This document shows positions 819 to 59,887 of a DNA stretch of 64,000 nt, one piece after another. The DNA lies in the IMG/VR virus record IMGVR_UViG_3300047994_000374, positions 1 to 64,000 of that record. One strand, 5' to 3'. The notes under the pieces were generated by a model, which saw only the letters and a program-made list of their open reading frames with translations, searched no databases and was not told the origin of the DNA. The translations under genes were made by a program, and so were the position numbers. Position 1 is the first letter of the stretch. Every line of letters starts with the position of its first letter.

Positions 819-1046
819 TTAGAAAAATGCCGCTAATTTAATTAAACGTAATGCATCTTCTTCTGTGTATTGGGTAAATTGATCGTGAGCCAATCTATAT
901 AATTTTTCACCATCACGATTTACATAAACTGCAAAATATCTAATATCCCCATCATCATAATTGCTATGCTTTTCACGATGGACCAATGATCCGCCCATTT
1001 TCAACCAATATTTTTCAATTTCAGGATGCATTATAAGAACGCCCAC
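819..1046 (-). CDS. tail-family protein, MHPEI subfamily
   Basis: MHPEI..YW...YTEE..; ends RLIKLAAFF; likely start at 1031 (TAATG overlap). Confidence 0.75.
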   Translation of the reverse strand: MGVLIMHPEIEKYWLKMGGSLVHREKHSNYDDGDIRYFAVYVNRDGEKLYRLAHDQFTQYTEEDALRLIKLAAFF

Positions 1047-1261
1047 ATTCGAATTATTCTCAGCGCTTCTTTTTCAGTATATTCTTCGCCAAAATTCTCA
1101 AATCGATAAATGATTTCGTTTTTCGAAGGAACAAAACGCCAAATACAAAAAATTGAATTACCATTCGGTTCATCATAATCCACAAATCTTAAATGGTCGA
1201 AAGTAACAAATTTTCCACCACGATTCTCCCAAAATTTTTTAATCTCTGGATGTGGAACCAT
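1031..1261 (-). CDS. tail-family protein, MHPEI subfamily
   Basis: HPEIKKFW...YTEKEA; ends RIIRMWAFL. Confidence 0.75.
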   Translation of the reverse strand: MVPHPEIKKFWENRGGKFVTFDHLRFVDYDEPNGNSIFCIWRFVPSKNEIIYRFENFGEEYTEKEALRIIRMWAFL

Positions 1262-1471
1262 TTACCAAAATGCTTTTATCTTAATCATCTTTCGTGCTTC
1301 TTCTTCGGTATAATATTTTAGATCATTATTATCAAATTTATATCGTAAAGTAGATGCATCAAAACATGCCCAAACCCACCGGCCATCATCATACAGAAAG
1401 TCCCAGAAGACAACGGTGTTTTGCATTCTACCTGGTTGAGCGAGCCAATAAGCTTTTATTTCTGGATGCAC
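1262..1471 (-). CDS. tail-family protein, MHPEI subfamily
   Basis: MHPEIKAYW...YTEEEA; ends KMIKIKAFW. Confidence 0.75.
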   Translation of the reverse strand: MHPEIKAYWLAQPGRMQNTVVFWDFLYDDGRWVWACFDASTLRYKFDNNDLKYYTEEEARKMIKIKAFW

Positions 1472-1473
1472 TT

Positions 1474-2001
1474 TTAATCTTGGTGAAGTTCTTTAGTAGC
1501 CAAGTTATAGTTATTAAATTTTTTGTCGGTTGTCACATCTTTAATTACTTTTAAGAAAGGCGGTAATTCTACTTTATCAGAGATCGAGGATAGTTCTATC
1601 TCAAGTATCGCTAAACCACTTAATGCGTTTTTAAAAATGTCCAATTCAAATACTTGGTTATTATACTTAAAAACAAACCGAGTTTTTTGAACCTCAGACT
1701 TATCTTTTCGAGCATCTTTTAAATGCTTTTCGTATTGTGCCTTGGTGATTTCATATTCCTTCTCTTCATGAACTCCAGGCTTGACGGGTTTCTTTTGATT
1801 GAAGTGATATTCAACATCTTCACCATTTAAGCCATGCACTGTTTTTCGAACACGAGCGGAAGGTTCGTCGCCTTCGGGTTCCAAATAGGTTTGTTCAATT
1901 TTAAGAATATCAATCATACCATCGAACATCTCGGACAACTTACTCCAAGATGATGGTACTTCAACAATGTATTTACGTTCCGCTTCTTCTTTAGTTCCCA
2001 T
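1474..2001 (-). CDS. CYTH-domain (triphosphate tunnel metalloenzyme) protein
   Basis: N-terminal ExERKY motif, IEQTYL, RVRK, KTRF, ELD and EIEL motifs. Confidence 0.85.
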   Translation of the reverse strand: MGTKEEAERKYIVEVPSSWSKLSEMFDGMIDILKIEQTYLEPEGDEPSARVRKTVHGLNGEDVEYHFNQKKPVKPGVHEEKEYEITKAQYEKHLKDARKDKSEVQKTRFVFKYNNQVFELDIFKNALSGLAILEIELSSISDKVELPPFLKVIKDVTTDKKFNNYNLATKELHQD

Positions 2002-2025
2002 GTATTAGTATAACCTTTTAGTCGT

Positions 2026-2149
2026 TTACAAGAAAGCCTGAATTTTTACAAGCGACCGTATCTTATTTTGTAAGTCTTTGGTAAATGGAATCCCTTCGCC
2101 CTGCCATTTCTTCTAAAGCTTTACCACAAAACAAACATGTCTCAAGCAT
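2026..2149 (-). pseudogene. internally deleted, frameshifted tail-family gene
   Basis: Starts MLETCLFCGK (CxxC); a different frame ends ..KIRSLVKIQAFL*; 124 nt, not a multiple of 3. Confidence 0.6.
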
Positions 2150-2150
2150 C

Positions 2151-2483
2151 TTAATAACCTCGTTGCCTGCATGAATAACAAATTAAAGTTCCATCTTCTT
2201 GATTTGGCTCGGCAAATTGAAAGAAGTTTGTGCATTTGCAGCAATAAAATCCGTCCAATCCTTTTTTATATTTGGCATCCTCCATGAAAACTTCCAACCG
2301 ATCAACTAAAGATAAGAGATTAATATTTACTAATTTCTCTTGAACAAGCCAAGTAAAATAAGAAGCAGTATTCGAGGTTCCCTGATCTGTTTTATCCGGG
2401 TCTGCAATATTGAATTCAGCTGAATGGTCTTGTGCCCATGATTTGATTAATTGGGTTAAGAGATTTTTGTTTCGAATGCTCAT
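2151..2483 (-). CDS. hypothetical protein with C-terminal Zn module (NQxDGTLICxxC family)
   Basis: CCKC...AEPNQEDGTLICYSCRQRGY, shared with 21222-21518 and 21722-22159. Confidence 0.7.
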   Translation of the reverse strand: MSIRNKNLLTQLIKSWAQDHSAEFNIADPDKTDQGTSNTASYFTWLVQEKLVNINLLSLVDRLEVFMEDAKYKKGLDGFYCCKCTNFFQFAEPNQEDGTLICYSCRQRGY

Positions 2484-2515
2484 AATTCCTCGCCGGTAAT
2501 ATAAGCAGTTAAGAA

Positions 2516-3070: not shown

Positions 3071-3387
3071 ATGAATATACCAGATTACTGAAAGGTTATG
3101 AGCGTTCGAATACGATTAAGAAGCCTATCTTTTGTGATGGTTTGAAAATCAATTACATTTCCATCTATATAACAATACTTTGGCTTAAATTGTTCTAATA
3201 CTGATCCATCACCATCGCATTTATGAATAGATATAATGTTCTTGATTGGATTAGAGTGAGTTTTAACGATGGTATAAAGTGTTTCACCATCATAAACTCG
3301 ACAATCTTCTTTTTCTAATTTAAATGGAATGTCCCAATGATTGAACCAAATTAAATAATGAGTGAATTACCATTGTATTAATGCAAT

Positions 3388-5153: not shown

Positions 5154-5459
5154 TTATAAAAATGTTTGTAATTTAACTAATCGTTTAGTTTTGTTTATTA
5201 ATTCTTTATCAGGCTCCCAAAAATCATTTATTTCAAATAATGCCGCTTCTGAATAGTTCCCAGGATTTCTTTGATGTAGTGTACTTACACTCTTTTCTTT
5301 AGATGAACGAAATATAAATCTTTCATTATTAAATATGAATGTATAGGTGTATCCTGCGCTTTTTACCCACTTCGAAAAATGATGATCTTGCTCGTTAACT
5401 GAACATTGCGGACCATTAAAAGGTTTATCACATATAGGGCATTTGTCAAGTTGAATCAT
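5154..5459 (-). CDS. tail-family protein with N-terminal CxxC
   Basis: CPIC..C; ends RLVKLQTFL; ATGA-coupled. Confidence 0.75.
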   Translation of the reverse strand: MIQLDKCPICDKPFNGPQCSVNEQDHHFSKWVKSAGYTYTFIFNNERFIFRSSKEKSVSTLHQRNPGNYSEAALFEINDFWEPDKELINKTKRLVKLQTFL

Positions 5460-5653
5460 GTGAATGCCGGAAGTAGTAATGCTAATTTAAATTTATTACA
5501 AATTGGAACAAAACAACTTTTACAAATTCGATTTCTACCAGGATACATATTAATTACAGCGAAGACATCATGTGTATTTAATAATTCATCACACTCATCA
5601 CATGTCCAAGCTCCGCTCCATCTTTCAACTTTAATTACTTTAATATCTATCAT
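5456..5653 (-). CDS. tail-family C4 zinc-finger protein
   Basis: CDEC/CKSC; ends LLLPAFT. Confidence 0.75.
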   Translation of the reverse strand: MIDIKVIKVERWSGAWTCDECDELLNTHDVFAVINMYPGRNRICKSCFVPICNKFKLALLLPAFT

Positions 5654-5880
5654 GCAAATGCCTTCAATTTAGGATCCATTGCCATTCTAAATTTATCACA
5701 AATGGGACCAAAACATTTTTCGCACAAGTAAATTACTCCACCAAAAGATTTATTGAAATAAATCCTGGCATAATTTTTGTGCTGATATAAACGACTATCA
5801 CATTCGGCGCATTTCCAATCGTATGACATCATAACTACGTTTTGAGAGTCGCGGCATGGTATAATTGTAATTTCGATCAT
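5650..5880 (-). CDS. tail-family C4 zinc-finger protein
   Basis: CAEC/CEKC; ends DPKLKAFA. Confidence 0.75.
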   Translation of the reverse strand: MIEITIIPCRDSQNVVMMSYDWKCAECDSRLYQHKNYARIYFNKSFGGVIYLCEKCFGPICDKFRMAMDPKLKAFA

Positions 5881-6092
5881 GTGAAAGCTCTAATATTGGG
5901 ATCAAGTTTTATTCTGACCTCTTTAACAAAGAGCGGAATACAAGCATTGCATAAATTAAAAGCATAATCTGCAAACTGACAATAAGCATATTGAGATCCT
6001 TCTGCTATTTCAGAACTACACATACGACAATAAGATACGAGATGCCATTCTGTACTAGTTTCTGTTAAATTAACAATTTCAAATTGAATCAT
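5877..6092 (-). CDS. tail-family C4 zinc-finger protein
   Basis: CRMC/CNAC; ends DPNIRAFT. Confidence 0.75.
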   Translation of the reverse strand: MIQFEIVNLTETSTEWHLVSYCRMCSSEIAEGSQYAYCQFADYAFNLCNACIPLFVKEVRIKLDPNIRAFT

Positions 6093-6313
6093 GTAAATGC
6101 TCTTAATTTTGGATCCATCGCCACTCTAATATCTTTAAAAACACTGTCAATACACCCTCCACAAATATAAAATGTTTCGTCTCTATCGTAAGTTGCATCT
6201 CGAAAATGAAACCTTACGCACGTTGTTCCTACTTTAATGCGTTCTGTAAGTTTTTCGCAGCCTTCATTGGCACAAAAAATATATGAAATAGCTTCTACAA
6301 GTTCAATTTTCAT
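6089..6313 (-). CDS. tail-family C4 zinc-finger protein
   Basis: CANEGC/CGGC; ends DPKLRAFT. Confidence 0.75.
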   Translation of the reverse strand: MKIELVEAISYIFCANEGCEKLTERIKVGTTCVRFHFRDATYDRDETFYICGGCIDSVFKDIRVAMDPKLRAFT

Positions 6314-6513
6314 GTGAAGGCTTTTAATTTCGGATCAAATAGAAGCCGGACTTTCTCTACGAATGGTCCAAAGCAACCTTCACAAATAAGCATCCTACCA
6401 GCATAATAAGAATCAATTTCTCCGGCAACTTTATAGATGTTTAATTGACCATCACAAAAATCACATGAATAATAATCTTCTTCAGATGTTTCTCGAATAT
6501 TAAGATCAATCAT
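6310..6513 (-). CDS. tail-family C4 zinc-finger protein
   Basis: CDFC/CEGC; ends DPKLKAFT. Confidence 0.75.
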   Translation of the reverse strand: MIDLNIRETSEEDYYSCDFCDGQLNIYKVAGEIDSYYAGRMLICEGCFGPFVEKVRLLFDPKLKAFT

Positions 6514-6713: not shown

Positions 6714-7120
6714 TTTAAAAACACATTAGGAAAGTGTAGTTTAAAAGTAGCAAGAGCTGCTCGATTATAAGACCCAAATGCAGCAGTTTCATCGGAAGTC
6801 AATTGTTTCGCAGTAATCCAAGCGACTTCCATATCCTCACACTTAGATGGTTCGCCTTCCCAATCTGTAGCATAAAAACAATAGGACATAAAGTCAATCC
6901 CATCAGGAGAATGTTTTGGTTCGAATTGATGAAAAATCTCTACGCAATCCTTTACAACCACTCCGGTTTCTTCTTTAGTTTCTCGAATGGCAGCTTCTTT
7001 AATTGTTTCTCCATCGTCTTGTTTTCCGCCGATTAATCCCCATTTGGTTTTATCAGATCTTCGCGTAATCCCAAGAATAAGACCATCTTTTATAATTAAC
7101 ATCACGGCTGCGTTTTTCAT
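6710..7120 (-). CDS. NUDIX hydrolase
   Basis: Nudix box GGKQDDGETIKEAAIRETKEETG. Confidence 0.92.
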   Translation of the reverse strand: MKNAAVMLIIKDGLILGITRRSDKTKWGLIGGKQDDGETIKEAAIRETKEETGVVVKDCVEIFHQFEPKHSPDGIDFMSYCFYATDWEGEPSKCEDMEVAWITAKQLTSDETAAFGSYNRAALATFKLHFPNVFLK

Positions 7121-7269
7121 AGGAATGCTTTCAATTTGATGAATTTAAGATCATTGGATAATTTTAAAAGTAGCCCAATCGGAAAGTAGTTTAGGACGAT
7201 GTGTGCAATTAGAATCGTTAGCGTTGCATGGATTTCCTTTTCCTTCTGGGAATTTCTGACAAACTTCAT
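7117..7269 (-). other. overprinted 50-aa ORF or orphan tail ending KFIKLKAFL
   Basis: Alternative frame of 7151-7381; its TGA overlaps the NUDIX ATG (ATGA). Confidence 0.45.
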
Positions 7270-7381
7270 AAAGATAACAGGTGTCACAAATATAATCGTT
7301 ATATTCGGTAAGAGCGTGTTCTAAATTCTCTTCTCCGTTTTTACAGCCATCACATTTACAATAATTACAAAATGGAATCAT
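7151..7381 (-). CDS. Cys-rich hypothetical protein
   Basis: Multiple CxxC; ATGA-coupled to the upstream gene. Confidence 0.7.
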   Translation of the reverse strand: MIPFCNYCKCDGCKNGEENLEHALTEYNDYICDTCYLYEVCQKFPEGKGNPCNANDSNCTHRPKLLSDWATFKIIQ

Positions 7382-7734
7382 CCGAAAACCATGATTTTTT
7401 TCATTCGTGCCATTACTTCATGATAAAGCTTTATAGGATCGGTAAAATTAAATTCAGTTTCCCAATGCAAGCTCAAAATATCTTCAAGCCAATCTTCATC
7501 ATTCCGCTGAATCCATTTTACAGTATTACTCGGTGTATTAAACTCAATCCAATTTTTGCCATCAATATTAAGTTGCATCCGTGACCACTCGGTGATTCGT
7601 ATATAATAGCACTCGTAATTAAGCTCATCCAAGCAGGCTGGGCAATAATATTCAGTTGGAAAATTATTTGAATTGACTAACTTGCCCTTACAAATTATAC
7701 ATGGTAATTTTGTCAGATCCTCAATAGAAATCAT
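7378..7734 (-). CDS. tail-family protein with N-terminal C4 ribbon
   Basis: CIIC/CPAC; ends RMKKIMVFG. Confidence 0.72.
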   Translation of the reverse strand: MISIEDLTKLPCIICKGKLVNSNNFPTEYYCPACLDELNYECYYIRITEWSRMQLNIDGKNWIEFNTPSNTVKWIQRNDEDWLEDILSLHWETEFNFTDPIKLYHEVMARMKKIMVFG

Positions 7735-8003
7735 GTGAAAGCTTTAATTTTTTCAGACTTTGCGTACACTCCTTTGTAAAGATCTCTAATCTCAGATTCA
7801 ATTTTACAGGGATAGGTCGAGAAGTTATCAGACCAATTGTATTCAAAATGTTTTAAATGGCGATAAGATTTTCTATTTTTAAAAGTGGAGTGTGTGCTTT
7901 GAATATACACCTCTAAAATCACTTCATTTGTGTTGTCATCCAAATGAAATTCAAGTTTGTATTGAATAGTTCTGTCTTCCAATGTTTTCGATAATAGAAT
8001 CAT
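7731..8003 (-). CDS. tail-family protein
   Basis: Ends SEKIKAFT. Confidence 0.7.
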   Translation of the reverse strand: MILLSKTLEDRTIQYKLEFHLDDNTNEVILEVYIQSTHSTFKNRKSYRHLKHFEYNWSDNFSTYPCKIESEIRDLYKGVYAKSEKIKAFT

Positions 8004-11135: not shown

Positions 11136-11746
11136 TTAAAAGGTGGTTTTGGTCAATTGTTTGCGAGCTATACACATCGCTCGTCTTATTTGGCTACGAC
11201 CTGCCGCCTCCCAAAGCCCTGTTCAATCAGCCTAAAGGACAATCAACAGTTCAATTTGTAGAAACACTTCGCGCCGACTTTACATTTAATTCTGAAGAAC
11301 GAGTTCAAATTCTTCGAGCTATCAAGGACATTGAGCGTTTTACCAATGATTTAATTTTATTTGAGATTGAATTCGATCTTAACCCAAGTGATGAAGAAAC
11401 TATTTACAATCAGTCAGTAATTATCCGCGCGCGTGAAGACCATCCTGCATTGGTTCCTTGGGATAATAAGAGCAAGGGAGTAAGGGCGTTAGGATTATGT
11501 TTTTCTAAAGATAATTATACCAAAAACCTTTATATCGTTCCCAATCGAATTAGTAATAATATTTTGTTTCGCACTACAATGATTCATGAGTTCGGTCATT
11601 TTATAGGACTTGGGCACGAGCCCAAACAATCCATCATGCACGCGGTCAATTACAATACAGTGCTTTACCCTACTTATATTGATGCAGCGGCTTTTGCTAA
11701 ACTTTATAATTGTAGTCCAGAAGAGTTCTGTTACTTCAAATTATAA
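11132..11746 (+). CDS. matrixin-like (metzincin) zinc metalloprotease
   Basis: HEFGHFIGLGH plus Met-turn SIMH; hydrophobic N-terminus. Confidence 0.85.
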   Translation: MIKRWFWSIVCELYTSLVLFGYDLPPPKALFNQPKGQSTVQFVETLRADFTFNSEERVQILRAIKDIERFTNDLILFEIEFDLNPSDEETIYNQSVIIRAREDHPALVPWDNKSKGVRALGLCFSKDNYTKNLYIVPNRISNNILFRTTMIHEFGHFIGLGHEPKQSIMHAVNYNTVLYPTYIDAAAFAKLYNCSPEEFCYFKL

Positions 11747-12121
11747 GAACGCCCGGATATTAATGATTTTTTGAAGATAAACTAATCTATCTTCGAATGG
11801 TGTAAATTTATTTTCGCGAATTATTTCTATATACTTCTTATATTCTTCTCCACCTTCCGTAATCATTTCACCGTTAAACAATTGAACCGCGACATAATTA
11901 TCTATCGCAGTTTCGGGCGTCGATGTGCAAGCTTCAACTAAAAAGTATTTATCATCAAAGAACATGTAATCCTGATAACAAATAACTTGATTAGTTGGCT
12001 GATAAATATAATAATAAAAATCGTTGCATCCAAAATTTAAACATCCGTAATGCATTTCTCCTTCTAAAGTTCCGGCTTCAGACTCAACAATAGGACCGCC
12101 ACAATGATGACATCTATTCAT
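11741..12121 (-). CDS. tail-family protein with N-terminal Cys cluster
   Basis: CHHC/CLNFGC; F.PFED..; ends KIINIRAFL. Confidence 0.72.
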   Translation of the reverse strand: MNRCHHCGGPIVESEAGTLEGEMHYGCLNFGCNDFYYYIYQPTNQVICYQDYMFFDDKYFLVEACTSTPETAIDNYVAVQLFNGEMITEGGEEYKKYIEIIRENKFTPFEDRLVYLQKIINIRAFL

Positions 12122-12465
12122 AGGAAAGCTCGTATTTTATATATTTTATCAACAAATTCACTTGAATTTTCATAAGGAACAAAAATATCTTCACGATATA
12201 TATTCTCATAATTAAGCTGAACGTTAGTCCAATTCGTCTCACTTAATTGAAATGTATCGATTTCTTTATTAGAATAAATTTGTAAATAATCACCATTTTT
12301 ATTAATTGCCCTATGATAATAAATAATTTCTTTCGTGGATTTTAGGCAAATAAATGCAATCTCACAAGTATTACAATCAAATTGTATTTCGTCCCGCATC
12401 GGGCGTGATTCTTTTAACTTACAAAAACAAGATTGACAAGTTTCCAATTCATCTGAAAAAATCAT
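12118..12465 (-). CDS. tail-family protein with N-terminal C4 ribbon
   Basis: CQSC/CNTC; FVPYEN..; ends KIYKIRAFL. Confidence 0.72.
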   Translation of the reverse strand: MIFSDELETCQSCFCKLKESRPMRDEIQFDCNTCEIAFICLKSTKEIIYYHRAINKNGDYLQIYSNKEIDTFQLSETNWTNVQLNYENIYREDIFVPYENSSEFVDKIYKIRAFL

Positions 12466-12466
12466 A

Positions 12467-13396
12467 TTAATATTTTAAACAATCAAAAGTGGAAACAAAT
12501 TTCTTCCAGTTATCTTCATTAGTAATTGAATTAAACTTCATTCGTTCAAATTCTTCTTTGAGGGCAGGAAAGTTTGTTTCGCCATCCTTCATTTCAATTT
12601 CTTCGGTTGGAACACTTTTAAATTCAACGAGCTGCCGATTGATATTAAAATTAGCTCTTGATTCTTCATTTTCCAAGAAGTTTTTAAGCAATTGCGGTTC
12701 CGCACACATCTCTTTAGCTTTTTTATCGGAGACCAATCGCTTAATACCATCCGACTTATCTCCCACTAAAGTTCGATATAGAGTGAAATGGTATTCAGGA
12801 GCAATGCGATCTTCCTTTTTAATTGGATTAAAGACGCGAATGTTCTTATAGCCTCTTTGGAGCAACTGGGTGTAGTCTGCGTCGTTTGAGATGACAGTTA
12901 GGTCTTCATCCTTCATGTTCTCACAAAGCGTTCCTATGGTATCGTCGCACTCATATTTAGCCGCTCGGACAACAGTGATGGGGAGATATTGAAGGAGATT
13001 GGTGATTTGATTAGCTTGGTCAATTACTCTGTCATAAGTGTCTTGCTTGGAGGATCGCTTAATAAGACGATCAGCTTTATATTCGGGAAAAAGATCATAA
13101 CGAAACTGTGGATGACCCTCAAGCGCGAAAAATGCCTTAACTGGTTGGAAGTTTTCGATATTAACCCGAAGACTACGAAAGAATGAATAGATGATATTGT
13201 ATTTATCACCATAACAAAATACTTCCTCTTCGTTCCAAGCCGCACCACATTGACAGTGAATGTCTCTATGAGCTGGATGTTTATCAGTATGATGTGAATT
13301 TTCTATATCACAATGTGCATGAGGAATTTTCGGACCAAATTGAACATTGGCTCGATGAATTTGGTTCATTGCATCGATTAATAATATTTTATCCAT
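12467..13396 (-). CDS. 5'-3' exonuclease / T4 RNase H-like flap endonuclease
   Basis: LLIDAMN, YKADR, ECDDTIG, SNDADY, LVGDKSDGI; His/Cys-rich insert near the N-terminus. Confidence 0.9.
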   Translation of the reverse strand: MDKILLIDAMNQIHRANVQFGPKIPHAHCDIENSHHTDKHPAHRDIHCQCGAAWNEEEVFCYGDKYNIIYSFFRSLRVNIENFQPVKAFFALEGHPQFRYDLFPEYKADRLIKRSSKQDTYDRVIDQANQITNLLQYLPITVVRAAKYECDDTIGTLCENMKDEDLTVISNDADYTQLLQRGYKNIRVFNPIKKEDRIAPEYHFTLYRTLVGDKSDGIKRLVSDKKAKEMCAEPQLLKNFLENEESRANFNINRQLVEFKSVPTEEIEMKDGETNFPALKEEFERMKFNSITNEDNWKKFVSTFDCLKY

Positions 13397-35786: not shown

Positions 35787-35795
35787 TTAAGTTAG

Positions 35796-37959: not shown

Positions 37960-37977
37960 GGTATTCTATTAATTTAG

Positions 37978-47896: not shown

Positions 47897-48213
47897 GAGA
47901 ATGTAATAAATGTTTTAATTTTATCGTTCGTAATATTAAATGGCAACGAGAAGTTTAGATACATATGTCGTTGCTTTTGAATTATTCTACAATCTAACCC
48001 ACCATTTGAGTTTGAATACCATTGAACGATATAGCTATCCATATCTTTTGTTATGCTGTATAGCTCTGTTTTGCTGATTGATTTTGATTTTGTTATGGTA
48101 ATATCACAACTATAACACGCCCGATTGCTTAAAGACCGGCGCATCTTCCCTTTACATACGGGACAAATTTCCGATTCAAAGATTTCTATGATGGTATCGA
48201 TAGTGATATTCAT
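47893..48213 (-). CDS. tail-family protein, LPxNTPFNIT-related
   Basis: CPVC/CYSC; LPFNIT; ends KIKTFITFS. Confidence 0.75.
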   Translation of the reverse strand: MNITIDTIIEIFESEICPVCKGKMRRSLSNRACYSCDITITKSKSISKTELYSITKDMDSYIVQWYSNSNGGLDCRIIQKQRHMYLNFSLPFNITNDKIKTFITFS

Positions 48214-48551
48214 TGGTATGTTAGGATTTTTTTAAGTCGTTCGATACTAATATCAATCGGCAGAGCAAATGGGAAATTAATCTTCCAATCAATATTTTGA
48301 CCAAAGACTTCCGTATAAGAACAAATTGCCGGATTCTCAAAGCCCGTAGACCAAATAATGATGTAGCGCTGCAAGTCTTTACTCATACGAATAGCATAAG
48401 TTCCGTCACCATAACACAACCTCACGATGCGAAACCTACACCGCACACATATTTTATGTATATCGCTACTATGCTTTTGGCTTTTGAGCGGTCGCCATTC
48501 TTTATTACAAAAAGGGCAATCATTTAGATTAAAGACTTCTTCAATGTTCAT
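48210..48551 (-). CDS. tail-family protein, LPxNTPFNIT-related
   Basis: CPFC/CVRC; LPIDIS; ends RLKKILTYQ. Confidence 0.75.
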   Translation of the reverse strand: MNIEEVFNLNDCPFCNKEWRPLKSQKHSSDIHKICVRCRFRIVRLCYGDGTYAIRMSKDLQRYIIIWSTGFENPAICSYTEVFGQNIDWKINFPFALPIDISIERLKKILTYQ

Positions 48552-48859
48552 TCAAAAGTAATTATCGTTTGAATGGTTGATTCTTTTAAATCAACAGGTA
48601 GCTCAAAGTCAATATCAAATGCCCGCTCTCTTTTAAAGATACCACATTGCACTTTATTAAAATCAGGCAAATAAGAATGCCAAATTGCGTAATAATTATC
48701 AAAATGCTTTATCATCTTATATTGTTTACCAATATTTGTGCGCTCAATGGTAATATCACAGTTCTTACACCGCAGAGGATAATAAACAGAGAACGCATTA
48801 GAAAATTCTTCATTGCAATTGGGACAGCACTTACTATCAAATATTTCTTTTAAATTCAT
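48548..48859 (-). CDS. tail-family protein, LPxNTPFNIT-related
   Basis: CPNC/CKNC; LPVDL; ends TIQTIITFE. Confidence 0.75.
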   Translation of the reverse strand: MNLKEIFDSKCCPNCNEEFSNAFSVYYPLRCKNCDITIERTNIGKQYKMIKHFDNYYAIWHSYLPDFNKVQCGIFKRERAFDIDFELPVDLKESTIQTIITFE

Positions 48860-49182
48860 GAGAATGTAAGAATTGTTTTGATCTTTGTTTCAGTAATGTT
48901 CATTGGAAGTTCATACTCGATGGTTTGAATGGGCGGAGGGTTAATTCTAATAAAGTTCGAGACGATATCATTCTCATCCTCACGCCAAATAACCGAATGC
49001 TCTTTAAAGTCCCTGAACATAAGATATCTACGCTTGGTCATATACTTCCACTTCCACCATTCAATTGTGAAGTGGCATTGCCAACAGTTCTTTTTGTTCT
49101 TCTTTTTACCAGAAAGATGCATTTTCTTATGGCAGATGGGGCAGTTCTTACGAGCGAATACATTCTTTAGTTTGATGGTCAT
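48856..49182 (-). CDS. tail-family protein, LPxNTPFNIT-related
   Basis: CPIC/CWQC; LPMNIT; ends KIKTILTFS. Confidence 0.75.
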   Translation of the reverse strand: MTIKLKNVFARKNCPICHKKMHLSGKKKNKKNCWQCHFTIEWWKWKYMTKRRYLMFRDFKEHSVIWREDENDIVSNFIRINPPPIQTIEYELPMNITETKIKTILTFS

Positions 49183-50309: not shown

Positions 50310-50663
50310 TCATGATAGTGTTATTAATTTTTGTAGTCTATCGTAAGTAATATCAAATGGGGGAGCGAAATCTAACTGTGTGTGAATCTTCTTTTGTTTC
50401 GCCAACCAACAAGTAATTTTATGAGCACCGAAAATAGTATCATCTTCCCAGCTCAAAATAAATTCAGTGCCGCTTTGATCCCACATTGTTTTATAAAGAC
50501 CATGTGAATAATATGTATTGCCAATGTATTTTCGCTTATCTAAAACTATATTACATGATAAACATTTTTTGGTTTCATAAACGAGGAGCCCATCTTTGTT
50601 TTTAAGCAAGTGTGATTTGCAGAGCGGGCAACATTTATTTCTGAATAGTGTTTTGATTTTCAT
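50310..50663 (-). CDS. tail-family protein, LPxNTPFNIT-related
   Basis: CPLC/CLSC; PPFDIT; ends RLQKLITLS (F replaced by L). Confidence 0.72.
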   Translation of the reverse strand: MKIKTLFRNKCCPLCKSHLLKNKDGLLVYETKKCLSCNIVLDKRKYIGNTYYSHGLYKTMWDQSGTEFILSWEDDTIFGAHKITCWLAKQKKIHTQLDFAPPFDITYDRLQKLITLS

Positions 50664-50686: not shown

Positions 50687-50761
50687 TGGAGCCCCCTGCC
50701 TGGAATCAAACCGGCACCCAAGACGTACAAAGTCCTAATTCTATCATTAAACTAAGGGGGC
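50687..50761 (-). tRNA. tRNA-Thr(TGT) with encoded CCA
   Basis: Acceptor GCCCCCT/AGGGGGC; TAGTTTAATGATAGAA D arm; anticodon loop TTTGTAC; T stem with a 1-nt bulge. Confidence 0.78.
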
Positions 50762-52212: not shown

Positions 52213-52401
52213 TCAAGTGAAAGCTTTAATCTTTTTGCATCTCTCGCTACAAAATCCGCTTCGTTGGCACATCTCTTCAAGTCTATTAAAAGATATCCCG
52301 ACGCCGTTAATGTAAGCATCATAGATAATTTTTTCATTACAAGCAAGACATCTTTCACCATACCACGCTCTAATATCTTTGACATCGGTATAATTTCTCA
52401 T
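52213..52401 (-). CDS. tail-family mini zinc finger (CxxC...CSxxC)
   Basis: CLAC/FCSERC; ends KKIKAFT. Confidence 0.75.
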   Translation of the reverse strand: MRNYTDVKDIRAWYGERCLACNEKIIYDAYINGVGISFNRLEEMCQRSGFCSERCKKIKAFT

Positions 52402-52550
52402 TCAAATGCACTCAATTCATCACATCTTTTACTACAATACTTAAAGCAATTACTTATACCAATTTCAGTAGCATAAGGGTCATATAATTTCTTACAAATA
52501 AGACATTCTGTTTCTACGCCAATATATGTGAAGTCATCGTCGTCATACAT
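52398..52550 (-). CDS. tail-family mini zinc finger (50 aa, not in track)
   Basis: MYDDDDF..CLIC...YCSKRCDELSAFE*; ATGA-coupled. Confidence 0.72.
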   Translation of the reverse strand: MYDDDDFTYIGVETECLICKKLYDPYATEIGISNCFKYCSKRCDELSAFE

Positions 52551-52694: not shown

Positions 52695-52885
52695 TGCCAA
52701 CACCTTAATTTACTACATCTTTCAGAACAATGCCACTCTTCATCGAAATTAAATTCATTGGTTTTCGATCGTAATTCAAACACTCCCTTGCATACTGGAC
52801 ACTCAACATTAACCATATAAATATAATGTTGGTTATAGTATCCGGAGTTCGTTAATATTTTATTGACCCATCCCACAGCTTTCAT
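52691..52885 (-). CDS. tail-family mini zinc finger
   Basis: CPVC/HCSERC; ends KLRCWQ. Confidence 0.72.
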   Translation of the reverse strand: MKAVGWVNKILTNSGYYNQHYIYMVNVECPVCKGVFELRSKTNEFNFDEEWHCSERCSKLRCWQ

Positions 52886-53064
52886 TCGAATCCCGAAAGT
52901 CTTTTACATCTTACTGAACAATAATCTTTCTTCCTCTTTATTTCATGGAGGTTAAACGCATCGTAAGTCATATCTACTTCAAATAAATTTTTACATATAT
53001 CACAGCTCATTGTAATAATATACGTAGGACCGTTAAGTTTGACGGATTTGTTTGACCACCACAT
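52882..53064 (-). CDS. tail-family mini zinc finger
   Basis: CDIC/YCSVRC; ends RLSGFE. Confidence 0.72.
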   Translation of the reverse strand: MWWSNKSVKLNGPTYIITMSCDICKNLFEVDMTYDAFNLHEIKRKKDYCSVRCKRLSGFE

Positions 53065-55494: not shown

Positions 55495-55734
55495 TTATAT
55501 AAATGCTTTCAATTTTAAGTATCGTTTAAATTCTTCTTCCGAGTATTCTTTCCCAAACAGAAACCATCGTTTGATTGTGCCGTCTGTTGATTCGATGGCT
55601 GGACCCAACTCTCTATGAATGATAAAATCTCGTCCACGTTGTAAATACCACTGCTCGCCACATGATCCGGGTTCACTCCGATCGCTATCCCAATAAGAAA
55701 CTGAGTATTCCTTTCCATCTTCTATGATTTTCAT
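55495..55734 (-). CDS. tail-family protein with an LHRxxGPA repeat
   Basis: IHRELGPAIE...WFLFGKEYSEEEF; ends RYLKLKAFI. Confidence 0.77.
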   Translation of the reverse strand: MKIIEDGKEYSVSYWDSDRSEPGSCGEQWYLQRGRDFIIHRELGPAIESTDGTIKRWFLFGKEYSEEEFKRYLKLKAFI

Positions 55735-56400: not shown

Positions 56401-56428
56401 TATACACACTCTATTCTTTAGCCGTGGA

Positions 56429-57574: not shown

Positions 57575-57669
57575 CGTTGCTCATCATATCGTTCTTTAAA
57601 TTTTTGTGGTGGGTTAAATGGGAATGGGAATAGTTAGAGGGTGATGTAGGAAATTGATTTGATTGCGCG

Positions 57670-57703
57670 AAGGCTCCTACATTACGGTATTTGTAGGAGC
57701 CTT
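57670..57703. terminator. stem-loop, probable terminator
   Basis: AAGGCTCCTACA-loop-TGTAGGAGCCTT between paralogs 1 and 2. Confidence 0.6.
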
Positions 57704-57718
57704 AATTAGATGAACCGA

Positions 57719-58273
57719 TTAACCAGTTGCTGTATGGGCGGCAGTTGCTTGTGCGCTTTCGATCTTGCGCAATCCGCCAAAGCGACCCTTGATAAGCTTG
57801 ATGTCTTTCCGCGAATGCAAGAGTTTGTTCACATTGTTCTTGCAGTCGGCTTCGTCCATCTTCACCTTGGCGGCGACCTTCGCAACCAAGTCTCGAGTCT
57901 TGAAACGATCTTCGGGTTTCACATTGTCGAGAATTTCTCCTGCTGCTGATTGAATCAATTTCGCAGTATCAGAAATACTACGCGGCTTCCGTTCCGGTTG
58001 TTTCGCCCCTACTCCACCGCCCGGACCACGAGCACTTTGAAGGTCCGCTCGTTGCGAGAGGTATGTATCGACGACTGCCATTGCCAACATCGGATTGCAA
58101 TCATTGAGATCGGTCAGCGTCTTTGCGAGACTGCTCTTCGTGATGCGCTCTCCTCGCTCACTCACTACATTGTCCAGGAGAGTTTCCGCCTGGTTTGCAA
58201 GCTTGGTAAAGATGTCGGTGACCTTGGTAACTGCCTCATTGTGTTTAGCCATTGTAATATCCTGCCTTTTCAT
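57719..58273 (-). CDS. tandem winged-helix-like DNA-binding protein, paralog 2
   Basis: YLSQRADLQSARGPGGG and LLHSRKDIKLIKGRFGG. Confidence 0.72.
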   Translation of the reverse strand: MKRQDITMAKHNEAVTKVTDIFTKLANQAETLLDNVVSERGERITKSSLAKTLTDLNDCNPMLAMAVVDTYLSQRADLQSARGPGGGVGAKQPERKPRSISDTAKLIQSAAGEILDNVKPEDRFKTRDLVAKVAAKVKMDEADCKNNVNKLLHSRKDIKLIKGRFGGLRKIESAQATAAHTATG

Positions 58274-58531
58274 TTTTTTGTTTTGTTTGTTTGACCCGCA
58301 GTTCGTATCGGGTGTCTATGGCTGTGGGTTTGATATGAATGGGAACCTTTATAAGTTAGTCGGTTTATGACACACTGAACTGTGCACGCGGTGAAACTTG
58401 TCTGCTCGTGCTGCCGGATCAAACGGAAACGGGTTGGCGATCTCACTTGACTTCTCCTCTAGACGGTTGTTGTAGGGGCAAACTGAACCCCTTACTTACG
58501 GCTCAGATGGTTATAGGTCAAGGGCTGAAAT

Positions 58532-58567
58532 AAAAAAGAGCGTGAACCAATTAAGATTCACGCCCCC
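58532..58567 (-). terminator. intrinsic terminator
   Basis: GGGGGCGTGAA-loop-TTCACGCTC followed by TTTTTT. Confidence 0.65.
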
Positions 58568-58590
58568 AAAACTACCGCAATCAACTTCTT

Positions 58591-59618
58591 TTAATTTGAA
58601 TTCATCGCTCTCAATATTTCTGCGTGAGCACGATGCTTGAACTTTCTCCAAGCCCAGTGAGCCAATGCGGGAACTTCATCCTCTGATACAAATCGAGCAA
58701 GGATGGTGCTTCGTTGTTCGTAAGTCAGCTCGTTCCATCTTTCTTCGTCGGAAAGGCGTCCGATCATCTTCGTTTCAAATTTCACCGCTCGGAATGATGC
58801 ACTTTGTCGACTCCGCACAGTTCGCATTGATTTGTTTCCTTGTCGAAAGAATGTTCGCATTCACCACTTAGGAATGACAACAAAATATCTCCTGCTTTCG
58901 GATCCTTTCTATGTTTGGTTGCATAGGTATGAATCGTGTCGAACAAGGCAAGATTGAAGCCTGCAGAACTAATTTTAGCTTTCTTCTGTTGCATGTGTTG
59001 GTTCCTCTGGGAAGAAACAGTTGATATCGGCACTGTGATAGTAGTCACCATCACGCCAAACGACAAGTGGATTTTGAATGGGTTCATCATCTAAAACGAT
59101 TCCACTCGTAAGATGATAGACCACAATCAGTTTCATCTTGTCAGCATAGTAGAACGGTGCCTTCGTTGGATTTGTAGTAGCAATCTTCGTTCCCTTCAAT
59201 AGTAAAACTTGATCGAACTGTTTGAATGGAAGAGAACTGATAGCATGAAAGCCTACATATCTCACTGGGCTTTACACTCTGCTACATAATCTTCACTGTC
59301 ATTAATAGTAGGCTCAACCGGATAACAAAACTTCTGGATGAGTTCTTCTTTTGAGATCTGGCTTTCATTATCACCAGCTCGATTAAAAGCGATTAGATCA
59401 TCAACCGAATCGTGAATGCGAGAGCTGGTTCCGATTTCTTCCACCCGCTCCAATTGCTTCTCGAGTTCGTCCATAGAGCTACGACCATACTCCTCCTTAT
59501 AGTATGCCTTAAACTCTTCCAGGCTCATACCATAAGTAATCGGAGCATCCACCACTGTGCTCCATTCCAAATACCAATCCTGTTGAGAATCAGTAAGCTT
59601 AATAATCATTCTACTCAT
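58591..59618 (-). other. four hypothetical ORFs
   Basis: ORF track 58591-58860, 58782-59090, 58975-59265, 59262-59618. Confidence 0.55.
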
Positions 59619-59701
59619 AAGTTATCTCTGTTCTTTTGTTTATAAATGGGAGCCGTAAGGGTATCCCAGGGCGCGGAATTTACTGCGATCGACCTTATCC
59701 A

Positions 59702-59887
59702 TTATAGAAAAGCCCGAGCGTTATAGCATTTTAAAAAACAAAAGCCTGTTCGTTCCGCCATAAACTTGGGCGACAATCGATTCACACAAGTAACGACGAA
59801 AATCTTCTTGCAGAGCTTGCAACACCATTCATCGCCCAACATTTCCTTTAGTATGTCATATTTAGTAAAGCACTTCCAATTTTTCAT
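59702..59887 (-). CDS. tail-family mini zinc finger
   Basis: CKLC/FCFLKC; ends YNARAFL; resembles 52213-52401. Confidence 0.7.
   Translation of the reverse strand: MKNWKCFTKYDILKEMLGDEWCCKLCKKIFVVTCVNRLSPKFMAERTGFCFLKCYNARAFL

What the first reader, a model, noticed from the sequence alone, without database searches (positions are those of the whole stretch)
819..59887. About 55 small proteins from unrelated-looking families share one C-terminal tail: a candidate tag-and-hub system
Seen in sequence: I count about 55 ORFs and remnants ending in [L/I/M/V/F]-x-[A/T/G/S/V]-F-x-stop, with W, Y or L occasionally replacing F. Examples are KLAAFF, KIKAFW, KLKAFT, NIRAFL, KLMGFL, TLITFS, KLEAFL, SLKAFL, ELSAFE and KLKAFI. 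A basic amphipathic helix usually precedes the tail (R/K-h-x-x-L-x-x-F). The bodies fall into at least 8 groups with no visible similarity to each other: MHPEI, C4 fingers, H-x3-HL, LPxNTPFNIT, CxxC/FxP, CSxxC mini-fingers, LHRxxGPA repeats and the 33 kb pair. The recognisable enzymes in the window lack the tail. Inference: the architecture is a variable body plus a constant docking peptide, conceptually like adaptor libraries that bring many targets to one machine. Candidate meanings from established motifs: (a) a membrane-targeting helix like the MinD MTS; (b) a sliding-clamp motif, since the spacing matches h-x-x-F-F of PIP boxes and QLxLF; (c) a protease-docking tail or degron (HbYX has a penultimate aromatic; Tsp/Prc recognises apolar C-termini). 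I do not recognise a described function for this tail.
Basis: partly seen in the sequence, partly recalled or inferred. Interest (0 to 1): 0.93.

Follow-up and report, generated by a model that had tools for sequence, protein, structure and literature searches.

The report
Shared C-terminal tag on phage proteins
About fifty small, mostly unrelated proteins of a 394-kb phage end in the same short helix (…R-x-x-K-L-K-A-F-x-stop); the same ending is found on many other protein families, and on a dNMP kinase, in other large uncultured phages, so it behaves like a portable address tag whose partner is still unknown.

Summary
I find 49 intact ORFs plus 2-3 remnants, all on the minus strand between 819 and 59887, ending in [LI]-x-[A/T]-F-x-stop. 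The strict motif occurs 36 times against 0.84 in shuffles. There are none on the other strand and 0 of 61 ORFs in the next 23 kb. Codons vary, so conservation is at the protein level. The window is the start of a 394-kb phage contig from a peat-moss metagenome.

The bodies are fewer independent groups than claimed, because the zinc-ribbon groups form one superfamily. At least six groups still have no detectable body similarity.

New evidence shows the tail is a portable module. The exact ending K-L-K-A-F-W-stop closes many unrelated ORF families in other, mostly large, viral contigs, whereas 120 hits in cellular genomes were all chance. One phage lineage has the ~17-residue tail added to a dNMP kinase that about 110 relatives lack. 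The K-L-K-A-F-W end follows 87 of 95 helix starts placed at the C-terminus, but only 1 of 134 internal ones.

AlphaFold places the tail as a confident C-terminal helix. The function is not shown. Docking to a common partner is the best inference, and the partner is unknown. No description was found in the literature.

The parts
819..1046 (-). tail ORF, MHPEI group, 75 aa, ends LIKLAAFF
1031..1261 (-). tail ORF, MHPEI group, 76 aa, ends IIRMWAFL
1262..1471 (-). tail ORF, MHPEI group, 69 aa, ends MIKIKAFW
   Evidence: a homologue with the tail is in another phage, L124:8615-8863
2026..2112 (-). 28-codon 3' remnant ending SLVKIQAFL, upstream frame broken by a stop
3085..3366 (-). 93-codon frame ending IRTLITFQ with no ATG/GTG/TTG start, 21 nt downstream of the TnpB gene 3388-4551; probably a truncated tail gene
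5154..5459 (-). tail ORF, zinc-ribbon superfamily, 101 aa, ends LVKLQTFL
5456..5653 (-). tail ORF, CxxC-DPK group, 65 aa, ends ALLLPAFT
5650..5880 (-). tail ORF, CxxC-DPK group, 76 aa, ends DPKLKAFA
5877..6092 (-). tail ORF, CxxC-DPK group, 71 aa, ends DPNIRAFT
6089..6313 (-). tail ORF, CxxC-DPK group, 74 aa, ends DPKLRAFT
6310..6513 (-). tail ORF, CxxC-DPK group, 67 aa, ends DPKLKAFT
   Evidence: homologues ending LDPKLWAFK are in L144
6510..6713 (-). tail ORF, CxxC-DPK group, 67 aa, ends DEAITAFT
7117..7287 (-). 56-aa ORF ending FIKLKAFL, overlaps ORF 7151-7381 in another frame; coding status uncertain
7378..7734 (-). tail ORF, zinc-ribbon superfamily, 118 aa, ends MKKIMVFG
7731..8003 (-). 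tail ORF, singleton body, 90 aa, ends SEKIKAFT
11741..12121 (-). tail ORF, zinc-ribbon superfamily, 126 aa, ends IINIRAFL
12118..12465 (-). tail ORF, zinc-ribbon superfamily, 115 aa, ends IYKIRAFL
13396..13623 (-). tail ORF, HxxxHL group, 75 aa, ends LKKVMAFL
13620..13904 (-). tail ORF, HxxxHL group, 94 aa, ends ENGLAGFI
13901..14218 (-). tail ORF, HxxxHL group, 105 aa, ends ESKLMGFL
15743..16015 (-). tail ORF, HxxxHL group, 90 aa, ends LKNIAAFL
18271..18618 (-). tail ORF, zinc-ribbon superfamily, 115 aa, ends LQTLYAFT
20344..20601 (-). tail ORF, singleton body, 85 aa, ends IQKLIIFS
29604..29891 (-). tail ORF, zinc-ribbon superfamily, 95 aa, ends YYNIKSFI; strain variant P0152 ends YYKIRSFI
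33173..33418 (-). tail ORF, 33-kb pair, 81 aa, ends RRMKLVAF (stops one residue early)
33418..33660 (-). tail ORF, 33-kb pair, 80 aa, ends RRIKLVAF
34826..35152 (-). tail ORF, zinc-ribbon PFxIT family, 108 aa, ends LKLLLNFT
35158..35484 (-). tail ORF, zinc-ribbon PFxIT family, 108 aa, ends IELLLAYT
35481..35786 (-). tail ORF, zinc-ribbon PFxIT family, 101 aa, ends LQTLITFS
37516..37959 (-). tail ORF, LHR-GPA repeat family, 147 aa, ends LLRLRVFW
38295..38636 (-). tail ORF, zinc-ribbon PFxIT family, 113 aa, ends IRRLIPFT
38633..38938 (-). tail ORF, zinc-ribbon PFxIT family, 101 aa, ends IKKLLVFS
38935..39240 (-). tail ORF, zinc-ribbon PFxIT family, 101 aa, ends CHKFLTFL
39237..39530 (-). tail ORF, zinc-ribbon PFxIT family, 97 aa, ends LDKLEAFL; AlphaFold model pLDDT 87, six strands plus helix 87-96
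40722..40919 (-). first half of the fused ORF 40431-40919: LHR-GPA unit ending WMKLKAFF, followed by a run of eight T; with seven T it would stop here
40431..40715 (-). second half of the fused ORF, starting at its own ATG: LHR-GPA unit ending FLKLKAFW
45994..46287 (-). tail ORF, zinc-ribbon superfamily, 97 aa, ends LINLVAFN
46284..46616 (-). tail ORF, zinc-ribbon superfamily, 110 aa, ends FNSLKAFL
46613..46897 (-). tail ORF, zinc-ribbon superfamily, 94 aa, ends YQKLGSFL
46894..47184 (-). tail ORF, zinc-ribbon superfamily, 96 aa, ends YMRLGAFS
47181..47429 (-). tail ORF, related to the zinc-ribbon group but without the finger, 82 aa, ends ASNLRAFL
47525..47896 (-). tail ORF, zinc-ribbon PFxIT family, 123 aa, ends IRTLQTFG
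47893..48213 (-). tail ORF, zinc-ribbon PFxIT family, 106 aa, ends IKTFITFS
48210..48551 (-). tail ORF, zinc-ribbon PFxIT family, 113 aa, ends LKKILTYQ
48548..48859 (-). tail ORF, zinc-ribbon PFxIT family, 103 aa, ends IQTIITFE
48856..49182 (-). tail ORF, zinc-ribbon PFxIT family, 108 aa, ends IKTILTFS
50310..50663 (-). tail ORF, zinc-ribbon PFxIT family, 117 aa, ends LQKLITLS
52213..52401 (-). tail ORF, CSxRC mini-finger group, 62 aa, ends CKKIKAFT
52398..52550 (-). tail ORF, CSxRC mini-finger group, 50 aa, ends CDELSAFE
52882..53064 (-). tail ORF, CSxRC mini-finger group, 60 aa, ends CKRLSGFE
55495..55734 (-). tail ORF, LHR-GPA repeat family, 79 aa, ends YLKLKAFI; AlphaFold model pLDDT 80, helix 66-78 is the most confident part
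59702..59887 (-). tail ORF, mini-finger group, 61 aa, ends CYNARAFL

Best explanation
The tail is a portable C-terminal helix module of about 15-17 residues. Its consensus is [S/T]-x-E-E-[F/Y]-x-R-h-h-K-L-K-A-F-[W/x]-COOH, degenerating to R/K(-9), K(-6), L/I(-5), A/T(-3), F(-2). It is specific to a group of large, uncultured phages.

Shown: it ends about 50 small ORFs of this 394-kb phage and many unrelated ORF families in other viral contigs. It can be added to a standard enzyme. It is conserved at the protein level and not the DNA level. Its last six residues are kept only at a free C-terminus. It is predicted to be a well-ordered helix.

Inferred: the helix is held against each protein's own body and presents a constant end (basic residues, Leu, Phe, and the nearby carboxylate). 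One common macromolecular partner recognises that end, so many different small early proteins, and in one lineage a dNMP kinase, are brought to the same place.

The partner is unknown. The leading guess is a component of the phage replication or transcription machinery, in the manner of the interchangeable clamp-binding C-termini of T4 gp43, gp33 and gp55. The reason is that tail genes lie beside helicase, helicase-loader, ribonucleotide reductase, sigma-factor, exonuclease and dNMP-kinase genes.
For: Enrichment and strand, region and size specificity. Protein-level conservation: F(-2) is coded by TTC 25 and TTT 19 times, and A(-3) by GCA, GCT, GCG and GCC. The last five residues are as similar between unrelated groups (39%) as within groups (37-65% in groups of three or more), while bodies are 18-37% identical within groups and not alignable between them. 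An IMG/VR scan for K-L-K-A-F-W-stop gave 81 distinct ORFs, of which about 55 are real ORFs in recurring families with at least 8 different non-repeat bodies. The same scan of cellular genomes gave 120 hits, all short chance frames. Across the foreign viral loci, 162 of 2564 ORFs carry the tail, including 59 non-repeat proteins in 44 body clusters and homologues of the window's MHPEI, CxxC-DPK and zinc-ribbon groups. Modularity: L091:2002-2643 is a dNMP kinase whose Pfam DNMK domain ends at residue 181 of 213. Only the 6 closest of 117 homologues (71% identity or more) carry the ~17-residue extension ending EFRRxxKLKSF[LI]. End dependence: 87 of 95 helix starts lying 15 residues from a C-terminus continue into K-L-x-A-[FL]-W, against 1 of 134 internal ones. 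Context: in about 9 contigs a 115-aa tail protein sits between ribonucleotide reductase plus a sigma-like factor and a DnaB helicase plus a DnaC-like loader, followed by two more tail ORFs. Precedent for interchangeable docking C-termini in a phage: PMC2988020.
Against: No partner was identified and no binding was tested. Both AlphaFold models place the tail as a confident helix contiguous with the fold (pLDDT 85 and 85-93), so a purely structural role is possible for those families. I could not read coordinates to see whether F(-2) is buried. About half of the window's tail ORFs belong to one zinc-ribbon superfamily, so part of the sharing inside the window is inheritance. T4-type clamp-binding tails are hydrophobic and acidic on flexible linkers, whereas this tail is basic (net +1.5 over the last 12 residues) and helical. 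The contig walk to 92 kb showed no clamp, protease or PDZ candidate, and 300 kb of the genome was not seen.
Confidence: 0.5

Rival explanations
1. The tail is only a structural element: a C-terminal capping helix that covers the beta-sheet of small beta-rich proteins. It is shared because these families descend from a common ancestor, or copied a good solution, and there is no common partner.
For: AlphaFold gives a confident C-terminal helix after a beta-meander in both the zinc-ribbon member and the LHR-GPA member. The two zinc-ribbon groups align collinearly without their tails (P = 5e-4). In the LHR-GPA repeat family a similar helix start follows the repeats in distant relatives such as Agrobacterium phage Atu_ph07. 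The conserved small residue at -3 fits close helix packing.
Against: The same tail is a lineage-specific extension of a dNMP kinase whose ~110 relatives fold without it. It also ends bodies that look all-helical or otherwise unrelated. The exact register to the stop codon (F at -2 in 46 of 49) and the loss of the K-L-K-A-F-W end whenever the helix is internal (1 of 134) are not expected for a packing helix. Between-group identity of the last five residues equals within-group identity.
Confidence: 0.2
2. The tail is a degradation or timing signal. A host or phage protease (ClpXP, Lon, FtsH or a tail-specific protease) recognises the C-terminal end and removes these early proteins on schedule.
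For: The strict dependence on the free C-terminus is typical of C-terminal degrons. The bearers are mostly small proteins in an early-looking, densely packed gene block. A basic-then-hydrophobic ending resembles the MuA-type ClpX recognition class (my recollection of Flynn et al. 2003, not tested here).
Against: Known C-terminal degrons are disordered, whereas here the tail is a confident helix with a conserved N-cap about 15 residues from the end. A dNMP kinase needed throughout replication is an odd client. Conservation of the motif across many contigs, presumably with different hosts, argues for a phage-borne partner.
Confidence: 0.12
3. The tail is a membrane-targeting amphipathic helix of the MinD or FtsA kind that parks the proteins on the inner face of the cell membrane.
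For: C-terminal position, basic residues next to Leu, Phe and Trp, helical propensity; Trp as the last residue in most foreign copies.
Against: The hydrophobic moment of the last 12 residues is the same as for other C-termini of the window (0.28 against 0.27). Membrane-targeting helices do not need a fixed distance to the carboxyl end. The helix is predicted with high confidence next to the fold and not as a free segment. The genomic context is replication and nucleotide metabolism.
Confidence: 0.06
4. The tail is a sorting signal for a phage-built compartment or for the capsid interior, analogous to encapsulin cargo-loading peptides. Tagged proteins would be packed into virions and injected, or concentrated in a replication compartment.
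For: It has the same logic as cargo-loading peptides: a short C-terminal peptide on unrelated cargo that is sufficient for loading (PMC11866011, PMC8229669). Encapsulin shells share the HK97 fold with phage capsids. Very large phages have room for many internal proteins.
Against: The sequence is unlike the known loading peptides. There is no evidence on expression timing or virion content. No shell-like or compartment gene was seen near the tail genes. This is a special case of the docking explanation and not a true alternative.
Confidence: 0.1

Closest known systems
Clamp-binding C-termini of T4 gp43, gp33 and gp55 (docking to the gp45 sliding clamp)
   Same: Short, highly similar peptides at the extreme C-terminus of unrelated phage proteins. 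They are freely interchangeable and all dock to one hub (PMC2988020). A hydrophobic-x-x-aromatic core is also present here (L at -5, F at -2, W at -1 in most foreign copies). Here too the bearers sit among replication genes.
   Different: The T4 tails are hydrophobic and acidic and hang on unstructured linkers. This tail is basic (+1.5) and is the end of an ordered helix with its own N-cap. T4 has three bearers; this genome has about 50. No clamp gene or clamp binding was examined.
PIP box and bacterial beta-clamp motifs (Q-x-x-h-x-x-a-a; Q-L-[S/D]-L-F)
   Same: Often C-terminal, with the same h-x-x-a-a spacing and basic flanks in many PIP boxes (general knowledge; review PMC9690074 listed, not read).
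   Different: No conserved Gln: position -8 is hydrophobic. In the window the last residue is usually not aromatic. The motif extends over a 13-residue helix.
Encapsulin cargo-loading peptides
   Same: A constant short C-terminal peptide on unrelated cargo proteins that is sufficient for targeting to one protein assembly related to phage capsids (PMC11866011, PMC8229669).
   Different: Different sequence and conformation; no shell gene was found next to the tagged genes; no evidence of encapsidation.
MinD / FtsA membrane-targeting sequences
   Same: A C-terminal basic amphipathic helix containing Phe.
   Different: No raised hydrophobic moment; a strict register to the carboxyl end; predicted to be ordered against the fold.
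HbYX and ssrA-type C-terminal recognition tails
   Same: Recognition depends on the free C-terminus. HbYX has a penultimate aromatic residue, as the window tails do.
   Different: In the foreign LHR-GPA arrays the penultimate residue is Leu as often as Phe (53 against 50) and the invariant residue is the terminal Trp. The ssrA-type L-A-A ending is absent. The tail is helical and not disordered.
LHR-x-D-G-P-A repeat proteins (weak Pfam DUF6745 matches)
   Same: Three window ORFs (four units) are members. This family carries the best-conserved version of the tail, and in several phages it has expanded to dozens of copies that all end K-L-K-A-[L/F]-W.
   Different: Most of the 19,705 relatives are long repeat proteins without the tail. 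The family has no known function or structure.

Membership tests
T4-type sliding-clamp-binding C-terminal epitope | Located at the extreme C-terminus of otherwise unrelated proteins | tested here: met
   F at -2 in 46 of 49 window ORFs; the exact ending occurs on many unrelated bodies
T4-type sliding-clamp-binding C-terminal epitope | Hydrophobic and acidic composition | tested here: not met
   Net charge of the last 12 residues is +1.5; R/K at -9 and -6, against 'hydrophobic and acidic' in PMC2988020
T4-type sliding-clamp-binding C-terminal epitope | Joined to the body by a flexible, divergent linker | tested here: not met
   AlphaFold places the tail as a helix contiguous with the fold at pLDDT 85-93
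T4-type sliding-clamp-binding C-terminal epitope | Binds the clamp | not testable with these tools
   No complex prediction or assay was available; no clamp gene seen in the 92 kb inspected
PIP box / beta-clamp motif | Q-x-x-h-x-x-a-a or Q-L-[S/D]-L-F consensus | tested here: not met
   The h-x-x-a spacing is present (L -5, F -2), but there is no Gln at -8, and the last residue is L/T/S in most window ORFs
MinD/FtsA-type membrane-targeting sequence | Amphipathic helix with a high hydrophobic moment, free to insert in the membrane | tested here: not met
   Mean hydrophobic moment 0.28 against 0.27 for other C-termini; the helix is predicted ordered against the body
ssrA / ClpX C-terminal degron | Disordered tail ending in L-A-A or a similar small apolar end | tested here: not met
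   The ending is A-F-x or A-[FL]-W and the tail is a confident helix
HbYX motif | Hydrophobic residue, then a penultimate Tyr/Phe, then any residue; docks into proteasome-type pockets | tested here: inconclusive
   The form is met in the window (A/T-F-x). In related phages the penultimate residue is L in 53 and F in 50 of 103 copies and the terminal W is invariant. The partner is not testable.
Encapsulin cargo-loading peptide | Short C-terminal peptide on unrelated cargo | tested here: met
Encapsulin cargo-loading peptide | Encapsulin shell gene nearby, and the loading-peptide consensus | tested here: inconclusive
   No shell-like Pfam hit among the proteins I scanned, but not every ORF was scanned. 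I did not compare against the consensus formally.
LHR-x-x-G-P-A repeat family (ORFs 37516, 40431, 55495) | H-R-x-x-G-P-A ... G ... W repeat unit | tested here: met
   A profile of the four window units finds 19,705 proteins at E 0.001 or better, mostly multi-repeat; weak DUF6745 hits for relatives
   hhalign with tails trimmed links only the two zinc-ribbon groups (P = 5e-4); all other pairs have P of 0.014 or more. A dNMP kinase also carries the tail.

The most novel reading that the evidence does not exclude
Large uncultured phages use a dedicated C-terminal address tag (…R-x-x-K-L-K-A-F-W-COOH) to send dozens of otherwise unrelated early proteins per genome, plus enzymes such as dNMP kinase, to a single phage-encoded hub, for example a replication or transcription platform or a compartment. 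This would be a linear-motif sorting system with no described counterpart in bacterial viruses.
Probability: 0.4. Interest if true: 0.9.

Novelty: new variant of a known kind. Interest (0 to 1): 0.8.

Why it matters
Most genes of very large phages are small ORFs with no annotation. A tag carried by roughly a third of the small genes in a 60-kb block of this phage, and recurring across many other uncultured phages, gives these proteins a common handle. Finding what binds the tag would assign a location or a pathway to many unknown proteins at once. The tag is short, portable and appears sufficient to be added to an ordinary enzyme in nature, so it could become a practical targeting tool. It also offers a simple sequence signature for recognising this group of phages in metagenomes. 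If instead the tail proves to be only a folding element, it is still an unusually clear case of one helix being reused by many folds.

Tried and rejected
1. DNA-level signal (promoter, ribosome-binding site or translational coupling element in gene ends). Rejected: synonymous codons vary at every conserved position, only 28 of 49 tail genes overlap the next start as ATGA, and other phages have the same tail with 3-nt spacers. The ATGA overlap does explain why the last residue is free in this genome (codon NNA).
2. Chance or composition. Rejected by shuffles, the opposite strand, internal windows and the neighbouring 23 kb.
3. Known families. Pfam and PHROGs give nothing for tail proteins. No PDB sequence match for the repeat family. 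No fold match for either model in the PDB (best E 1.5-1.8).
4. Cultured relatives. Megablast and tblastn against 50,697 phage records found nothing for the window, for the 591-aa ORF, for ORF 40431 or for the 115-aa tail family. Only the repeat itself is found, in Atu_ph07, a Celeribacter phage and three huge uncultured phages, and the Atu_ph07 copy lacks the tail end.
5. Word-seeded homology searches for ORF 55495 and for the zinc-ribbon alignment returned only this contig and one strain variant.
6. Pattern-based locus search with the zinc-ribbon alignment failed for lack of a conserved stretch. A metagenome search anchored on the methyltransferase found no relative, so no orthologue-based dN/dS was possible.
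7. The 'internal tail' in ORF 40431-40919 as evidence that the tail works internally. Rejected: it is a run of eight T that fuses two genes.
8. Walking the contig to 92 kb for a hub candidate found only unannotated small ORFs.
9. Literature searches for the motif, the repeat and DUF6745 found nothing relevant.
10. Helical-wheel reasoning about which face is exposed. Abandoned as ambiguous without coordinates.

Full report
**What the window is.** The window is the first 64 kb of a 394,192-bp contig, ERZ12293633 scaffold_73_c1, also held as IMGVR_UViG_3300047994_000374. It comes from Sphagnum peat-moss microbiome metagenomes (PMC9584203). It is about 35% G+C up to 56 kb and 42-43% after that. 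It is packed with small ORFs on the minus strand. The recognisable genes are phage-like: an RNA ligase, a 5'-3' exonuclease, Dam-type and FkbM-type methyltransferases, two TnpB genes, a serine resolvase and an FtsK-like ATPase. No cultured phage is related at the DNA or protein level.

**The observation.** With my own greedy ORF call (168 ORFs of 40 aa or more), 36 end in [LIMVF]-x-[ATGSV]-F-x-stop. The frequency of the same 5-mer inside proteins predicts 0.7. Two thousand shuffles of each protein's last 20 residues give a mean of 0.84 and never more than 5. A position matrix, scored leave-one-out, adds near variants. A scan of the ten residues before every stop codon in all six frames finds 49 hits at score 8 or more, all on the minus strand, and adds ORFs that my gene call had displaced.

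The total is 49 intact ORFs, two clear 3' remnants (2026-2112 and 3085-3366) and one weak remnant. All ten quoted tails are at the stated genes. Three contrasts support the specificity of the tail:
- It is confined to 0.8-59.9 kb: 43 of 152 ORFs there, against 0 of 61 in the next 23 kb of the same contig (Fisher p = 8e-8). That neighbouring stretch has equally small, equally dense minus-strand ORFs.
- It is confined to small proteins: 43 of 120 minus-strand ORFs of 165 aa or less, against 0 of 19 larger ones.
- The recognisable enzymes in the window lack it.

**Protein, not DNA.** Phe at -2 is TTC 25 times and TTT 19 times. Ala at -3 uses all four codons. Leu at -5 uses six codons. So the signal is not a promoter, a ribosome-binding site or a repeat. 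Twenty-eight of the 49 genes overlap the next start as ATGA. That forces the last codon to end in A, and it explains why the last residue is free in this genome (L, T, S, I…) while related phages keep Trp there.

**The motif.** Information content is concentrated at R/K(-9), K(-6), L/I(-5), A/T(-3) and F(-2). In many families an N-cap-like [S/T]-x-E-E-[F/Y] lies 15 residues from the end. AlphaFold models were built for a zinc-ribbon member (39237-39530; 23-sequence alignment; pLDDT 87) and for an LHR-GPA member (55495-55734; 30-sequence alignment; pLDDT 80). Both put the tail in a C-terminal helix after a beta-meander, and in the second model the helix is the most confident part. Neither model has a significant match in the PDB. 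I could not read coordinates, so I cannot say whether Phe(-2) is buried.

**How many kinds of body.** With the last 14-16 residues removed, BLAST splits the set into 32 clusters. Profile comparison joins the 'P-F-x-I-T' zinc-ribbon group and the 'F-x-P' zinc-ribbon group over 75 collinear columns (P = 5e-4). These, about 24 ORFs, are best treated as one divergent superfamily. The other groups show no similarity to it or to each other once the tail is cut (all P of 0.014 or more):
- CxxC-DPK, 6 ORFs
- HxxxHL, 4 ORFs
- CSxRC mini-fingers, 4 ORFs
- MHPEI, 3 ORFs
- LHR-GPA repeats, 3 ORFs with 4 units
- the 33-kb pair
- singletons

The last five residues are 39% identical between unrelated groups. 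Within groups of three or more they are 37-65% identical (100% in the two-member 33-kb pair). Bodies are 18-37% identical within groups.

**The apparent internal tail.** ORF 40431-40919 contains …W-M-K-L-K-A-F-F in its middle. The DNA there reads GCA TTT TTT TTA ATC ATG, a run of eight T. With seven T the frame reads K-A-F-F-stop and the next gene's ATG follows. This is two tail genes joined by a one-base difference in a homopolymer. Whether that difference is real or an assembly error cannot be told. It is not an exception to the C-terminal rule.

**Beyond this genome.** A profile of the LHR-GPA units finds 19,705 proteins, mostly long repeat proteins without the tail. The family has only weak DUF6745 matches, no solved structure and no literature.

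In several viral contigs of 70-130 kb the family has expanded to dozens of small paralogues. Every copy ends …[S/T]-E-E-E-[Y/F]-W-R-h-V-K-L-K-A-[L/F]-W-stop.

I then scanned IMG/VR for a back-translated K-L-K-A-F-W-stop. It gave 81 distinct ORFs. About 25 are short chance frames and about 30 are LHR-GPA proteins. The rest are real ORFs with clearly different bodies that recur in several contigs, many of them 90-480 kb long:
- a 115-aa family
- a helical '…D-L-Y-D-I-L…' family
- a '…C-K-N-D-x-E-Y…' family
- zinc fingers

All were short non-genic frames. The tail therefore looks phage-specific.

Across all foreign viral loci, 162 of 2564 distinct ORFs carry the tail. They include 59 non-repeat proteins in 44 body clusters. 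Among these are homologues of the window's own groups, tail included: MHPEI (L124), CxxC-DPK (L144), zinc-ribbon P-x-N-I-x (L154, L113, L138, L140) and zinc-ribbon F-x-P (L160).

**Modularity.** L091:2002-2643 (213 aa) is a T4-gp1-type dNMP kinase. The Pfam DNMK domain runs to residue 181, which is model position 229 of 232. The rest of the protein ends …D-S-A-D-E-F-R-R-I-L-K-L-K-S-F-L. Among 117 homologues, only the six closest (71-100% identical) have this ~17-residue extension, and in them it is nearly invariant. Apart from a few truncated fragments, the remaining full-length kinases (56% identity or less) stop at the kinase's last helix. A standard enzyme gained the tail in one lineage and kept it. 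This rules out the idea that the tail is simply the core helix of a single fold.

**Dependence on the free end.** In the foreign ORFs and repeat proteins, the helix-start motif lies exactly 15 residues from the C-terminus 95 times, and 87 of those continue into K-L-x-A-[F/L]-W. It lies 25 or more residues from the end 134 times, and only one of those does. Some internal matches are surely unrelated sequences, because the start pattern is loose. Multi-domain repeat proteins such as P0125 and P0052 show the same behaviour directly: they keep the S-x-E-E-F start internally but lose the ending.

**Context.** In about nine contigs the 115-aa tail protein sits in a conserved block:
- ribonucleotide reductase
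- a sigma-70-like factor
- the tail protein
- a DnaB helicase
- a DnaC/IstB-like loader
- two more tail ORFs

In the window, the 5'-3' exonuclease lies between tail genes. Together with the tagged dNMP kinase, this gives a loose link to replication and nucleotide metabolism.

**Interpretation.** The shown facts are as follows. The tail is a portable C-terminal helix under strong protein-level selection. It is specific to a set of large phages. It sits on many unrelated bodies. It is end-dependent and ordered.

The best reading is a constant recognition surface that brings different proteins to one partner. This has the same logic as the interchangeable clamp-binding C-termini of T4 gp43, gp33 and gp55 (PMC2988020) or encapsulin cargo-loading peptides. 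It is not a member of either class: it is basic and helical where the T4 tails are acidic and on flexible linkers, and it lacks the PIP and beta-clamp consensus.

Among the rivals:
- A purely structural capping helix remains possible for the beta-rich families, but it does not explain the kinase or the end dependence.
- A degron fits the end dependence but not the ordered helix.
- A membrane anchor fits least, because the hydrophobic moment is 0.28 against 0.27 for other C-termini.

No partner was found in the 92 kb of the contig that I could inspect.

**Limits.**
- Gene calls are my own ORF calls.
- The matrix was built from the same tails it scores, except.
- The IMG/VR scan was restricted to the W-ending variant with TAA or TGA stops.
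- Classification of repeat proteins used a simple pattern.
- No orthologue pairs were available for dN/dS.
- The AlphaFold alignments are shallow.

Noticed in passing
window 40719-40730 (inside ORF 40431-40919): A run of eight T joins two adjacent LHR-GPA tail genes into one 162-aa ORF; with seven T the first gene would end K-A-F-F-stop and the second would start at its own ATG. It could be an assembly error, a recent mutation or a slippery site.
   Followed up: partly
window 3085-4551: A TnpB gene (3388-4551, Pfam OrfB_IS605 plus the Cas12f1-like TNB domain) lies 21 nt upstream of a 93-codon tail-bearing frame (3085-3366) that has no ATG/GTG/TTG start, as if the insertion had cut off the 5' part of a tail gene. 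A second TnpB is at 14271-15443.
   Followed up: partly
window 25394-26427 (+ strand): A serine resolvase (25394-25966) is followed by a 154-aa ORF (25963-26427) that matches the start of 419-aa ORFs next to the same resolvase in other phage contigs (for example L009:7566-8825). This looks like an IS607-type element with a truncated second gene.
   Followed up: no
window 2151-2483, 21222-21518, 21722-22159: A second, different shared C-terminus: three ORFs with otherwise dissimilar N-terminal parts end in …D-G-[T/I]-L-I-C-[Y/W]-[S/A]-C-[R/K]-x-x-(x)-Y-stop after a C-x-x-C pair, that is, a common C-terminal zinc-finger module.
   Followed up: no
window 35795-35865, 37977-38059, 50687-50761: Three tRNA genes (Arg-tct, Tyr-gta, Thr-tgt) on the minus strand, each lying between arrays of tail genes.
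   Followed up: no
window about 56000 onward, and contig 64-92 kb (L283, L284, L285): G+C rises from 0.35 to 0.42-0.43 near 56 kb. The last tail ORF ends at 59887, and small minus-strand ORFs without any tail and almost without Pfam hits continue for at least 30 kb. The two blocks may have different origins or expression classes.
   Followed up: partly
L005, L009, L012, L014, L019 (IMGVR_UViG_3300042477_000802, 3300035663_000001, 3300044843_001040 and others): Massive paralogue expansions of small LHR-GPA repeat proteins (often starting M-Q-E-I-K), up to about 15 copies in 20 kb, interspersed with GIY-YIG endonuclease genes and a RecA-like gene that carries an inserted zinc-finger and DUF559 region.
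   Followed up: partly
window 60950-61753: A stand-alone 267-aa FtsK/HerA-type ATPase (weak similarity also to the poxvirus A32 family) in a tailed-phage-like genome; its role here is unclear.
   Followed up: no
window 9186-10961 (+ strand): The largest ORF of the window (591 aa) is on the opposite strand to nearly everything else and has no Pfam, PHROG or cultured-phage match.
   Followed up: no
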